Below are positions 49,273 through 63,532 of a DNA stretch of 64,000 nucleotides, one piece after another; position 1 is the stretch's first letter; each line of letters begins with the position of its first letter. The stretch is taken from the NCBI RefSeq assembly GCF_018977255.1, contig NW_024704765.1, positions 4,092,001 to 4,156,000 of the forward strand, given 5' to 3'. A program made the position numbers and the translations under genes. Source of the DNA: Callorhinchus milii. Lineage: Eukaryota. A model generated the notes under the pieces. It did not search any database. It was given only the letters and a program-made list of their open reading frames with translations, and was not told the origin of the DNA.

Positions 49273-52200
49273 TCACTGTTCCCTCTCTTTGGAGGAGAGG
49301 TTGTCAGGGGAGCTTTGGAAGTTGGACTGGGTGTTGTATTCTGGTTTGAAGAGAATAATGTAACATTTGGGGATAAAATAGGCTACGAGAATGCCATAGA
49401 TGCTGATCATACCTGTGGACATCTGGATACATGGCACCAGCTTGCCACTGAAGCTGGTGTAGGTGGGGATGAAGAATATCCAGGCAGCAAAGTAGATGAG
49501 TGTGGAGCGCATGATGCAGCGAGCCAGGTTGTAAGCCTGCCCTGAGCGCTGGCCCATGAACGTACACAGGAAGCATGCAAGGCCTAGCAATGCATTGTAA
49601 GCCACCAACAGCCCAAAGCCAGACAATGAGCTCTCAGAACACTCGACAACTATTTGAGTCTCAGAGACATTGTAATTATTCAACACAGTGGGTGGTAAGC
49701 TGAACTGCCACGTGCACAGTGCCGCCTGACACATAATAATGAAAGCAACCACTAAATATTTCATGCTGGCAATGATCAGCTTGGGGCACAATGTGGGTGG
49801 AATGCTGGATGTCCCACACAACGATCCCACTTGGAAAGCTCTGGTCAACATGACTGATAAGCAGCCGGTGAAGCCGATGTTGAAAATGGGTTGTCTTATG
49901 GTGCATGAGAGCTGGGTAGGGCAGCCCACAAAGCAGAAGATACTGCAGCAGGAGATTGCCAGGGACACCAGCATCACAAAGCACAGGCTGCCACCAGCAA
50001 ACTGCACAATGGGTGTGTGAAAATGGACAATGAAGATAGCGACTGCCGAGATGATGACGAGGAGGGCCAGCACGGCCATGGTGCTGAGGACGATGGTTGG
50101 TGAGTCTGTCCATTCCAAGAATGCAATGCTTTTGTTGTGACATTCCACGCTCCGTTCCTTTGACCACTGATCACTCCGGCACGCTATGCATTTATTCACT
50201 GGGGAAAGAGAGGAAGGAAATATCGCTCTACATTAAAAAAAATTATCTTAAAGAGCACTAATAATCCTCACATTCGATTCTGCACCTATTATAATAATAA
50301 TAATAATCCTTGCATTTGATATAGAGCTTTTCACGTCGGGAGGACGTCCCAAAGCGCTTCACAGAACACACTGTAAAGTGAATTGACTGTATATTTGTGG
50401 GCGAACGCGGCAGCCAATTGCGCACAGCAATGTCCCACAAACAGTCGTAGATTGAAAATGACCAATTTATTATTGTTTTGTTTTGGAGGGATTATTATTA
50501 GGCTCTGTGTGGAGTAAGGAAACTTGCCCAAGGTTTCGCCCTGCCTGGAATTGAACTCAGGTCTCTTGCTTGCAAAGCGAGTGCTCTAACCACTAAGCTA
50601 CAGGACTCCATTATGTGCGACCGTCTCAAAGTGCTACTTGTCAAGTAACCGCTGTTAGGTGTAGTAACTGTGTATCTGTAGGAAAGCAAGGCAGTCAATT
50701 GATGTCCAGCTGTGTACCACAAAGAGCCATTAAGAAAATGAGCAATGCCAGAGGATCTTCACTGAGTTCAGTTCTGGGCAGAGGCTGGTGTGTGCCACTG
50801 TCTGGGGAAATGGCCAGTAGCTGTTAAGGAGGGGAATGACGCTGCAACGTACTTTGATTCTGGAAGGTATTCTTTGGACAGTCAACACACTCATAGCAGC
50901 AGGACTGGTAACCCTTCAACATGCGCACTTGCCCCATCTTGCAGCTGGTGGAGCAGTTCGAAACTGGAATCTGAAAGTCAAAAAGAAACGTTTCCTTATT
51001 GTCTGTCAGGGCTTTGAGCCACTCAATTATGGGGCACGTTGGTTTGAAACCTGCATGATACTCTGATACCAGACTTCAAACTCTACCTATACCCAAATGG
51101 AATTGGAGAGATTGATCAGGAATGTGTCACAGTGGCCAGACTGAAGGCTTGAGTCATCAAGAGTTCTCAGGCAGCGACGATATTCACTAACCAGGAATGA
51201 ATTGGCTCTGCCATTGTCCAGTTTGAAGAAACATTGGTATTGATCTAAGAGCAAGGAATCTCCAGACATTCCTGGTCTGTGAGAAATGATCTCGGCCGGA
51301 CACTGCTATTGGGACCATTAGCCTCTGTGCCCTGGGCTAGGGTAGAAGATAATTTACCAGATTTACCATTACCTTATTTTGGTGTATGGCATATGACAAC
51401 AACAACAACAAGATTCCATTTACAGAGCGCCTTTCACGTCGGGAGGACTTCCCAAGGCGCTGGACAGTTGGGTCAGGACCCGAGCAGGGGGGAAATGGTC
51501 AGGGTGAGGGGAGGGAAGGGAGGGAGCGAGGAGGGGGGAAATGGTCAGGGTGAGGGGAGGGAAGGGAGGGGGTAGAGAGTCGAGAGGGAAGCTGAAGGCA
51601 CGGTCAAAGAGAAAAGTCTTGAGACCGGCCTTGAAGAAGGAAAGGGAGGAAGCAAGGCGAAGGCACTGGGGGATAGACAATCAATTACCTGGTTCCCAGG
51701 AGTGTTCCACTGGATTTGGGACACGTTAATATCCAGCTCTTTCCACAGTGCTCTGTATTCCCCAATTTTTCTGAATTCAGGCTCCTGATCCTTCCCATTC
51801 CAGTGCCAATTAACAATATCATATCCTGTGGGCGGATCTCCATTTGGGGTGAAGTAGATGTCATGGCCATTCAATGTAAAGTTCACTTGTGCCAATGTCT
51901 CCAGGAGCTGATTGAAATGGAACACAGCTTTTAAACATCCAAGGGCATGTGAGAGAACAGTCAGGATCCTGACGGCTTTAGATAAACTGAACGTAAAATA
52001 TGTGACATAGTCATAGATCTGCGAGGGACACAGACTTGAGTGTAAGATCCAGGAGGTGAACAGAGAGTTACGATTGAATGATTTTATTAAATGGAGAATA
52101 CAGGAAGATGGTGCAGGGAGATTGTGTCATCAGATTAAAGGGAATTAGATGTTACAGGGCCCTTGGTGTGTTTTAGAGGTAAATGATTGATGTTTCTGTT

Positions 52201-63356: not shown

Positions 63357-63532
63357 ATGTGGCTCCTGCTGGCCGTTGTGCTGTGCCTTGTGGCACAAGC
63401 CGCAAACACCAGCAACATTGCAGCAGCGTTCAGCTTGCCGGGAGATTACGTGATCGGTGGCTTGTTCCCGATCCATTATGCCCAGCCTAACGGTGTGAAC
63501 CAATCCGAGCCCATCACTCCAGACTGTCAGAG
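63357..63532 (+). CDS. Taste receptor type 1-like gene C, exon 1 only (gene continues beyond the window)
   Basis: MWLLLAVVLCLVAQAA signal peptide, then FSLPGDYVIGGLFPIH...PDCQ(R). Phase-2 donor ag|gtcagt, the same phase as exon 1 of genes A and B. A different class C GPCR cannot be excluded from one exon. Confidence 0.8.

What the first reader, a model, noticed from the sequence alone, without database searches (positions are those of the whole stretch)
49273..63532. Expanded cluster of at least three divergent T1R taste receptors where mammals have only TAS1R3
Seen: two complete open 6-exon class C GPCR genes and the first exon of a third, within 15 kb next to DVL1-MXRA8. They are clearly divergent from each other, so not recent duplicates. 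Known: human has only TAS1R3 tail-to-tail with DVL1. From memory, a vertebrate-wide T1R survey (Nishihara et al., Nat Ecol Evol 2024) described extra lineages (TAS1R3C, TAS1R4-8) clustered at this locus in non-teleost fishes, so the system may already be described for this species. Inference: gene A is the common-partner subunit (T1R4/T1R3-type), and B and C are further lineages giving heterodimers beyond sweet and umami. A and B both keep the amino-acid-binding signature region (GPxxS, SY.xS, DxxYG, SExW).
Basis: partly seen in the sequence, partly recalled or inferred. Interest (0 to 1): 0.8.

Follow-up and report, generated by a model that had tools for sequence, protein, structure and literature searches.

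The report
Elephant fish T1R taste receptor cluster
This is the cluster of type-1 taste receptor genes (TAS1R4, TAS1R3C and the start of a TAS1R6 gene) beside DVL1 in the elephant fish, real and intact, and already described and partly assayed in a 2023 paper.

Summary
At 49273-63532 there are two complete six-exon class C GPCR genes on the minus strand (846 and 844 codons, all introns GT-AG, same phases) and exon 1 of a third on the plus strand. They lie tail to tail with a Dishevelled gene that follows MXRA8.

The window is Callorhinchus milii or something near-identical. 862 of 863 residues of the NCBI protein 'taste receptor type 1 member 3 [C. milii]' map exactly onto gene A. Exon 1 of gene C matches residues 1-59 of 'taste receptor type 1 member 1 [C. 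milii]'.

Per-exon maximum-likelihood trees place all three inside T1R, apart from GPRC6A and CaSR-like receptors. Gene A is TAS1R4, gene B is TAS1R3C, and gene C (through its database protein) is one TAS1R6 subclade. A perfect octamer lies 105 nt upstream of gene A, as published for TAS1R4.

Nishihara et al. 2023 (PMC10781636) describe this DVL1/MXRA8-flanked cluster in elephant fish. They cloned these genes and found that only T1R6-2/T1R4 responded, to amino acids. So the finding is already known.

Gene B, however, is the cartilaginous-fish counterpart of TAS1R3, not a further lineage.

Small additions: one public contig shows gene A spliced at e1-e2, and no transcript evidence was found for gene B. 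The first-stage scan had also noted the octamer on this window.

The parts
49273..55056 (-). Gene A = TAS1R4. Six exons: 55056-54860, 54056-53756, 53278-52499, 51907-51689, 50970-50853, 50198-49273 (stop 49273-49275). 846 codons.
   Evidence: Splice sites and phases are. 862 of 863 residues of P0151 (NCBI 'taste receptor type 1 member 3 [Callorhinchus milii]') map exactly. The trees are. An X2 contig joins 54860 to 54056.
50971..51021 (-). 51 nt that the NCBI model P0151 adds to exon 5 of gene A by using an upstream acceptor. This gives 17 extra residues.
   Evidence: P0151 residues 500-555 map to 51021-50854. Whale shark, Mustelus and catshark orthologues align only from the acceptor at 50970 (pyrimidine share 0.88 against 0.56). 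This junction was not covered by the reads laid.
55161..55168 (-). Perfect octamer ATGCAAAT, sense to gene A, 105 nt upstream of its ATG.
   Evidence: Read. It is one of 5 matches in the window against 4.14 expected by chance, so only its place is telling. PMC10781636 section 10 reports this motif as conserved upstream of TAS1R4, elephant fish included in the set analysed.
56931..61852 (-). Gene B = TAS1R3C. Six exons: 61852-61656, 61256-60959, 60501-59734, 59247-59044, 58253-58133, 57877-56931 (stop 56931-56933). 844 codons.
   Evidence: Splice sites are. The exons are collinear with shark orthologue P0203 at every junction. Exon 3 is 100% identical to P0180 over 256 columns. Exon 6 is 99.7% identical to P0001. 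The trees are. No spliced contig was seen in 4 of 4 runs.
63357..63532 (+). Gene C, exon 1 only (58 codons plus 2 bases). It is a TAS1R6 gene. The rest lies beyond the window.
   Evidence: 59 of 59 residues are identical to residues 1-59 of P0269 (NCBI 'taste receptor type 1 member 1 [Callorhinchus milii]'). The donor was read. P0269 sits in a cartilaginous-fish clade supported 100/100.
17747..46665 (+). Dishevelled gene (DVL1 by synteny), tail to tail with gene A. The two stop codons are 2.6 kb apart.
   Evidence: Pfam finds DIX (E 2e-17), DEP (E 4e-13) and Dsh_C (E 2e-32) in exon translations. The paralogue number rests on the synteny reported in PMC10781636. It was not tested here.
318..6286 (+). 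MXRA8, in part: an Ig V-set exon and a transmembrane exon.
   Evidence: The PDB sequence search gives matrix remodeling-associated protein 8 at E 9e-99. Pfam finds V-set.

Best explanation
The stretch is the proximal part of the type-1 taste receptor (TAS1R) gene cluster of the elephant fish Callorhinchus milii. It lies next to MXRA8 and DVL1. The gene order is TAS1R4 (gene A, minus strand), TAS1R3C (gene B, minus strand) and the first exon of a TAS1R6 gene (gene C, plus strand, head to head with B).

Each gene encodes a class C GPCR made of a Venus-flytrap ligand-binding domain, a cysteine-rich domain and seven transmembrane helices.

By the published assays, such subunits work as obligate heterodimers. 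T1R4 is a T1R3-like common partner. Elephant fish T1R6-2/T1R4 responds to Ala, Arg, Lys, Val and Leu. T1R6.1/T1R3C of a shark and a stingray responds to sucrose, Pro and Ala.

Shown here: the gene structures, their intactness, their identity with named C. milii proteins, their clade membership, the flanking genes, the octamer, and one spliced junction of gene A in RNA-like data. Inferred from the literature and not tested here: pairing, ligands and expression in taste cells.
For: - Pfam domains 7tm_3, ANF_receptor and NCD3G are found.
- PDB sequence searches with exon 3 rank T1R3 first for both genes: 182 and 203 bits, against 152-153 bits for CaSR.
- Both genes have six exons with GT-AG introns and the same phases.
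- Exact mapping onto database proteins: P0151 862 of 863 residues, P0269 residues 1-59.
- Exon 6 tree (83 reference proteins plus the window's exons, IQ-TREE with the LG+C20 PMSF model):
  - All T1Rs stand against GPRC6A and CaSR-like rows at 100/98.
  - A is in a cartilaginous-fish clade (100/99). That clade joins caecilian, newt, frog and lizard proteins (100/97), and together they are sister to TAS1R3 (100/99).
  - B is in a cartilaginous-fish clade (100/99) that is sister to TAS1R3B plus TAS1R3A (98/87).
  - P0269 is in a TAS1R6 subclade (100/100).
- The exon 3 tree gives the same local clades: 100/99 for A and 98/91 for B.
- A FastTree of 116 full-length proteins gives the same picture.
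- The flanks are confirmed and the octamer is present.
- The X2 contig is spliced exactly at 54860|54056 and leaves the genome at the exon 2 donor.
- PMC10781636 names elephant fish among the species with a DVL1/MXRA8-flanked TAS1R cluster. It reports TAS1R3C, TAS1R4 and TAS1R6-1/-2/-3 cloned from its genomic DNA (sections 6, 9, 11 and 20 read).
Against: - In the exon 3 tree the cartilaginous and bony TAS1R4 groups are not joined (open fork). TAS1R3C there sits beside TAS1R3A, not outside 3A plus 3B. The AU test does not reject TAS1R4 as one clade (p 0.30), but that is not positive support.
- Clade names were assigned by topology and taxon content as the paper describes them. The paper's own sequences are in supplements that I could not open.
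- Only exon 1 of gene C is in the window, so its placement rests on the database protein P0269.
- There is no transcript evidence for gene B. Bins 56900-57499 have depth 0 in 4 of 4 runs, and the only pieces on B are unspliced.
- The runs are only guessed to be RNA. They also hold intronic and intergenic pieces.
- The octamer's count in the window is at chance level.
- The paper found no response for any elephant fish pair containing T1R3C.
Confidence: 0.93

Rival explanations
1. Gene B (TAS1R3C) is a silent or decaying copy in the elephant fish. Only TAS1R4 serves as the partner subunit in this species.
For: - No spliced contig lies on B, and most of its exon 6 has depth 0 in 4 of 4 runs.
- Among the hits, B appears only as two conflicting UniProt models (P0180, P0001), and neither keeps the six-exon structure.
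- Sharma et al. 2019 wrote that TAS1R3 appears lost in elephant shark (PMC6368271, passages read).
- No elephant fish pair containing T1R3C responded in PMC10781636.
Against: - All six exons are open, with canonical splice sites. They are collinear with shark orthologues and give 844 codons.
- The end branch of B is not longer than that of gene A (0.50 against 0.51 in exon 3).
- The pocket motifs are kept.
- T1R expression is confined to rare cells, and the tissues of the runs are unknown, so absence from the contigs says little.
Confidence: 0.1
2. The genes are olfactory-type V2R/OlfC, CaSR or GPRC6A receptors and not taste T1Rs.
For: The domain architecture is the same. NCBI names two ray members of gene A's clade 'extracellular calcium-sensing receptor-like' (P0161, P0008).
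Against: Four GPRC6A rows and three CaSR-like rows fall outside a T1R clade that holds A, B and P0269, supported 99/97 (exon 3) and 100/98 (exon 6).
Confidence: 0.01
3. A, B and C are a lineage-specific recent expansion of one T1R gene in chimaeras.
For: The genes lie in tandem within 15 kb.
Against: They are 35-37% identical to each other. Each has its own orthologues in sharks and rays at 45-56% identity. A also has relatives in amphibians and lizards.
Confidence: 0.01

Closest known systems
TAS1R4 (Nishihara et al. 2023, PMC10781636)
   Same: Gene A groups with cartilaginous-fish, caecilian, newt, frog and lizard proteins as the sister of TAS1R3. It has six exons and the octamer upstream, and it lies next to DVL1. 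The paper cloned the gene from this species and used it in assays.
   Different: Nothing of substance. The NCBI name is 'member 3', and the NCBI model carries 17 residues at the exon 4/5 junction that the shark orthologues lack.
TAS1R3C, the cartilaginous-fish counterpart of TAS1R3A/3B
   Same: Gene B sits in a cartilaginous-only clade that is sister to TAS1R3A plus TAS1R3B in the exon 6 tree. Its exon 3 is not split, unlike the TAS1R3B of ray-finned fishes described in the paper.
   Different: It lies one gene further from DVL1 than human TAS1R3, with TAS1R4 between them. The exon 3 tree puts it beside TAS1R3A. No ligand is known for it in this species.
TAS1R6 (three subclades, cartilaginous fishes only)
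   Same: Exon 1 of gene C equals the start of P0269, which sits in one of three cartilaginous-fish subclades. Each subclade holds one C. milii protein.
   Different: Which of TAS1R6-1, -2 or -3 it is could not be told. The paper's figures and supplements are not held.
Human TAS1R3-DVL1 locus
   Same: A T1R gene lies tail to tail with DVL1, with MXRA8 beyond it (PMC10781636; flanks).
   Different: Here the gene next to DVL1 is TAS1R4, which mammals lack. Two further T1R genes follow it.

Membership tests
TAS1R / T1R (class C GPCR) | Venus-flytrap domain, cysteine-rich domain and class C seven-helix domain | tested here: met
   Pfam finds ANF_receptor, NCD3G and 7tm_3 in exon translations of A and B. 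NCD3G was scored for B's exon 5 only. A's exon 5 was not among the ten pieces sent.
TAS1R / T1R (class C GPCR) | Six coding exons with a conserved structure | tested here: met
   Six exons, GT-AG introns and phases 2,0,0,0,1 in both A and B. The paper states six exons for all TAS1Rs except ray-finned TAS1R3B.
TAS1R / T1R (class C GPCR) | Falls inside the T1R clade, apart from GPRC6A, CaSR and V2R | tested here: met
   The T1R clade is supported 99/97 (exon 3) and 100/98 (exon 6) against 4 GPRC6A and 3 CaSR-like rows. V2R sampling was thin.
TAS1R4 | Sister clade of TAS1R3, with members in cartilaginous fishes, amphibians and lizards | tested here: met
   Exon 6: a 14-row clade at 100/97, joined to TAS1R3 at 100/99. 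Exon 3: unresolved and not rejected (AU p 0.30).
TAS1R4 | Octamer ATGCAAAT within 300 nt upstream of the start codon | tested here: met
   It lies at 55168-55161, 105 nt upstream, in sense orientation. The window-wide count is at chance level. Binding of an Oct factor was not tested.
TAS1R3C | Cartilaginous-fish clade sister to TAS1R3A plus TAS1R3B | tested here: met
   Exon 6: a 7-row clade at 100/99, sister to 3B plus 3A (98/87), inside TAS1R3 (100/99). Exon 3 places it inside TAS1R3 (89/75) but next to 3A (98/93).
TAS1R6 | Cartilaginous-fish clade related to TAS1R1/2/5 | tested here: inconclusive
   Only exon 1 is in the window. It is 59 of 59 identical to P0269, and P0269 is in such a clade (100/100, 100/98). 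The three subclades form one clade in exon 3 (100/92), but the fork is open in exon 6.
TAS1R cluster locus | Flanked by DVL1 and MXRA8 | tested here: met
   MXRA8 by PDB sequence match. A Dishevelled gene by DIX, DEP and Dsh_C. The paralogue number was not tested.
TAS1R / T1R (class C GPCR) | Obligate heterodimer that responds to amino acids or sugars, expressed in taste receptor cells | not testable with these tools
   This rests on the literature only. Here there is one spliced contig of gene A in a run of unknown tissue.

The most novel reading that the evidence does not exclude
TAS1R3C and the adjacent TAS1R6 gene are transcribed divergently from start codons 1.5 kb apart. They may be co-regulated as the two halves of one receptor, the elephant fish counterpart of the sucrose/Pro/Ala-sensing T1R6.1-T1R3C pair reported for a shark and a stingray. 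TAS1R4, with its own octamer promoter, would then serve a second, separate amino-acid receptor in other cells. That would make the gene order of the cluster a wiring diagram of which subunits pair.
Probability: 0.1. Interest if true: 0.45.

Novelty: already known. Interest (0 to 1): 0.15.

Why it matters
The locus shows that the ancestor of jawed vertebrates had a tandem T1R cluster beside DVL1, of which mammals keep only TAS1R3. That point has been in print since 2023, for this very species.

This check adds annotation-level detail:
- exact exon coordinates;
- the mismatch between public gene names and clades (gene A is named member 3, gene C member 1);
- a probable mis-chosen acceptor in the NCBI model of TAS1R4;
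- first, thin transcript support for TAS1R4 splicing;
- the absence of any transcript support for TAS1R3C.

Tried and rejected
- V2R/OlfC, CaSR or GPRC6A identity: rejected by the trees.
- Recent tandem duplicates: rejected by 35-37% identity and separate shark orthologues.
- Octamer enrichment: not found. There are 5 perfect matches against 4.14 expected, and 72 one-mismatch matches against 88.8 expected. Only the place upstream of gene A counts.
- The four 'amino-acid-binding' motifs as a discriminating sign: rejected, since GPRC6A and CaSR-like rows carry similar strings.
- Naming gene C as TAS1R6-1, -2 or -3: not possible. The text, legends and extended-data legends of PMC10781636 and the 2026 preprint give no key, and supplements are closed.
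- Transcript evidence for gene B: none in four runs.
- Earlier findings by words: nothing.
The only hint is that NCBI proteins of the three clades share one 'longest contig' length within Mustelus asterias (76,748,233) and within Hypanus sabinus (47,430,385).
- No structure was predicted, because the family is plain from sequence.
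Full report
**What is there.**
The region 49273-63532 holds stop-free segments on the minus strand whose translations carry the class C GPCR domains. These are 7tm_3 (E 2e-48 for gene A exon 6, 9e-45 for gene B exon 6), ANF_receptor in exons 2 to 4, and NCD3G in exon 5 of gene B. 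A plus-strand open segment at the end holds a signal-peptide-like first exon. The window has only two single N positions, far from this region, and I left them alone.

**Gene models.**
I placed exon borders from canonical GT and AG sites near the ends of homology with shark orthologues.
- Gene A: 55056-54860, 54056-53756, 53278-52499, 51907-51689, 50970-50853, 50198-49273.
- Gene B: 61852-61656, 61256-60959, 60501-59734, 59247-59044, 58253-58133, 57877-56931.

In both genes the intron phases are 2, 0, 0, 0, 1.

Gene C exon 1 is 63357-63532, with a phase-2 donor as in A and B.

Every search, alignment and tree used single exons of the window, or full-length proteins that the databases returned.

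**Which organism and which annotated genes.**
A profile of the two exon 6 translations was searched against 1.84 billion representatives. It found 2498 proteins at E up to 0.001, and the best 150 were returned. The two best are models of genes B and A. Three searches with returned full-length proteins gave names.
- P0151, NCBI 'taste receptor type 1 member 3 [Callorhinchus milii]', 863 aa. It maps exactly onto the six exons of gene A for 862 of 863 residues.
- P0180 and P0001, two UniProt 'Taste receptor type 1 member 3' models of C. milii. They map onto gene B but differ from each other and from the six-exon model.
- P0269, NCBI 'taste receptor type 1 member 1 [C. milii]'. Its residues 1-59 are exon 1 of gene C.

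So the window is elephant fish or something near-identical.

The NCBI model of gene A starts exon 5 at 51021, 51 nt upstream of the acceptor at 50970 where the whale shark, Mustelus and catshark orthologues begin to align. That accounts for 863 against 846 residues.

**Flanks.**
Upstream on the plus strand lie an MXRA8 exon (PDB sequence match E 9e-99) and a Dishevelled gene with DIX, DEP and Dsh_C exons from about 17.7 to 46.7 kb. Its stop codon is 2.6 kb from the stop codon of gene A, tail to tail. I did not test which DVL paralogue it is. DVL1 follows from the published synteny.

**Family and clade.**
- PDB sequence searches with exon 3 rank T1R3 chains first for both genes. A scores 182 bits and B 203 bits. 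T1R2 scores 165 and 161, and CaSR about 152.
- For trees I first drew a FastTree of 116 of the 456 proteins then held. I then chose 83 of the 485 held, leaving out mainly redundant bird T1R3 and teleost T1R1 rows to keep run times within limits. The choice was made.
- Twenty unnamed representatives were named by exact look-up. They supplied four GPRC6A and three CaSR-like outgroup rows.
- The window's exon 3 and exon 6 translations were added as fragments to an alignment of the 83. Each exon's columns were then analysed with IQ-TREE under the LG+C20 PMSF model.

In the exon 6 tree:
- All T1Rs form a clade against GPRC6A and CaSR-like rows (100/98).
- Gene A is identical to P0151. It sits in an eight-row cartilaginous-fish clade (100/99).
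- That clade joins caecilian, newt, frog and lizard proteins (14 rows, 100/97). Together they are sister to TAS1R3 (39 rows, 100/99).
- Gene B sits in a seven-row cartilaginous-fish clade (100/99). This is sister to TAS1R3B plus TAS1R3A (98/87), inside TAS1R3 (25 rows, 100/99).
- P0269 sits in a five-row cartilaginous-fish clade (100/100), within the group that holds TAS1R1 and TAS1R2.

This is the topology by which PMC10781636 defines TAS1R4, TAS1R3C and TAS1R6 (sections 6 to 8 read).

The exon 3 tree gives the same local clades (100/99 for A, 98/91 for B). It leaves the union of cartilaginous and bony TAS1R4 unresolved and puts TAS1R3C next to TAS1R3A. An AU test on exon 3 does not reject TAS1R4 as one clade (log-likelihood difference 0.31, p 0.30).

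Each of the three TAS1R6 subclades holds one C. milii protein (P0269, P0271, P0273), as the paper says. I could not tell which number (6-1, 6-2 or 6-3) belongs to gene C. The figures and supplements that would show it are not held.

**The octamer.**
ATGCAAAT lies at 55168-55161 on the strand of gene A, 105 nt upstream of its ATG. An earlier first-stage note on this window had flagged it. The motif occurs 5 times in the window against 4.14 expected, so only its position carries weight. [quoted passage not shown] It proposes an Oct factor such as Skn-1a/Pou2f3.

**Transcripts.**
One search for runs listed eight holders, none on record as RNA, and four guessed to be RNA. I laid those four (contigs only) on 53700-59699, a stretch chosen to include exons of both genes.
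- In run X2, a 663-nt contig matches 55146-54860 and then, without a break, 54056-53754. That is exon 1 joined to exon 2 of gene A exactly at the predicted donor and acceptor.
- Its last 72 letters lie on nothing in the stretch, as expected if it continues into exon 3, which lies outside the stretch.
- The contig carries one base difference and one inserted base, so it comes from another individual.
- For gene B there is no spliced contig. Bins 56900-57499 (most of exon 6) have depth 0 in 4 of 4 runs. The pieces of run X1 that touch B cross exon-intron borders unspliced.
- Run X1 also holds intronic and intergenic pieces at depth 2 to 5, so DNA or unspliced RNA is present in these runs.
- Contigs of X1, X2 and X3 also cover 55109-55335, across and upstream of the octamer, so the transcription start of gene A is not placed.

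**What is already in print.**
- It says the novel TAS1Rs lie side by side there, and that elephant fish has TAS1R3C, TAS1R4 and TAS1R6-1, -2 and -3.
- These were amplified from genomic DNA, with the exons assembled by overlap PCR. Of the combinations tested, only T1R6-2/T1R4 responded, to Ala, Arg, Lys, Val, Leu, and Ala with IMP.
- Its in situ work was on bichir, not elephant fish.
- A 2026 preprint (10.64898/2026.08.28.746343; outline, section 8 and passages read) reports that T1R6.1 with T1R3C of great white shark and red stingray responds to sucrose, proline and alanine.
- An older survey (PMC6368271, passages read) counted four tas1r genes in elephant shark and thought TAS1R3 lost there. 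The intact gene B agrees with the 2023 paper and not with that statement.
- A search for T1R6, T1R3C, TAS1R6 or TAS1R3C found six papers, of which three are relevant: these two works and the preprint version of the first.

**Verdict.**
The genes are T1Rs. Gene B is the TAS1R3 counterpart and not a further lineage, and gene C is a TAS1R6. The system is already described for this species, so novelty is nil and interest low.

What remains open is small:
- the subclade number of gene C;
- the true exon 4/5 junction of TAS1R4;
- whether TAS1R3C is expressed;
- whether the head-to-head placement of TAS1R3C and the TAS1R6 gene (start codons at 61852 and 63357) means shared regulation of a receptor pair.

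Noticed in passing
window 50536-50607 (-), 55708-55781 (-); repeat copies at 50296-50548, 55455-55720, 58826-59015, 62245-62547: tRNA-like heads (Rfam tRNA, 47 and 43 bits) and four or more copies of a SINE-like repeat lie in the T1R introns and intergenic DNA. In the four runs laid, these places reach summed contig depths of 1e4 to 4e5, while the genes around them are near zero. The element is therefore very abundant in this genome or its RNA.
   Followed up: partly
window 63214-63221 and 63224-63231 (+): Two near-octamers (ATACAAAT and ATGCAAAG) lie side by side, 126-143 nt upstream of gene C's start codon and in sense orientation. One-mismatch octamers are not enriched in the window (72 against 88.8 expected), so this may be chance. 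The 2023 paper saw no Oct sites at the other novel TAS1Rs.
   Followed up: partly
window 61852-63357: Genes B (TAS1R3C) and C (TAS1R6) are head to head, with start codons 1.5 kb apart. The space between them holds a SINE copy (62245-62547). The pair T1R6.1-T1R3C is a working receptor in a shark and a stingray according to the 2026 preprint.
   Followed up: no
window 50971-51021 (-): The NCBI model of gene A uses an acceptor 51 nt upstream of the one that fits the shark orthologues. This adds 17 residues between the flytrap and cysteine-rich domains. Both acceptors keep the frame.
   Followed up: partly
window 55109-55335: Contigs of runs X1, X2 and X3 cover the octamer and up to 170 nt upstream of it, at depth 2-3. 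Either transcription of gene A starts upstream of the octamer, or these runs hold DNA.
   Followed up: no
alignment columns 624-627 of the 83-protein set (gene A 'SEGW', gene B 'SEAW'): The glutamate of the SExW motif is kept in 6 of 6 TAS1R3C rows and 7 of 7 cartilaginous TAS1R4 rows. It is replaced in 7 of 7 TAS1R3B rows.
   Followed up: no
window 54937 and behind 55108: The spliced X2 contig differs from the window by one base in exon 1 of gene A (T>G on the plus strand). It also has one inserted C in the 5' untranslated part. This is probably an allele of another individual.
   Followed up: no
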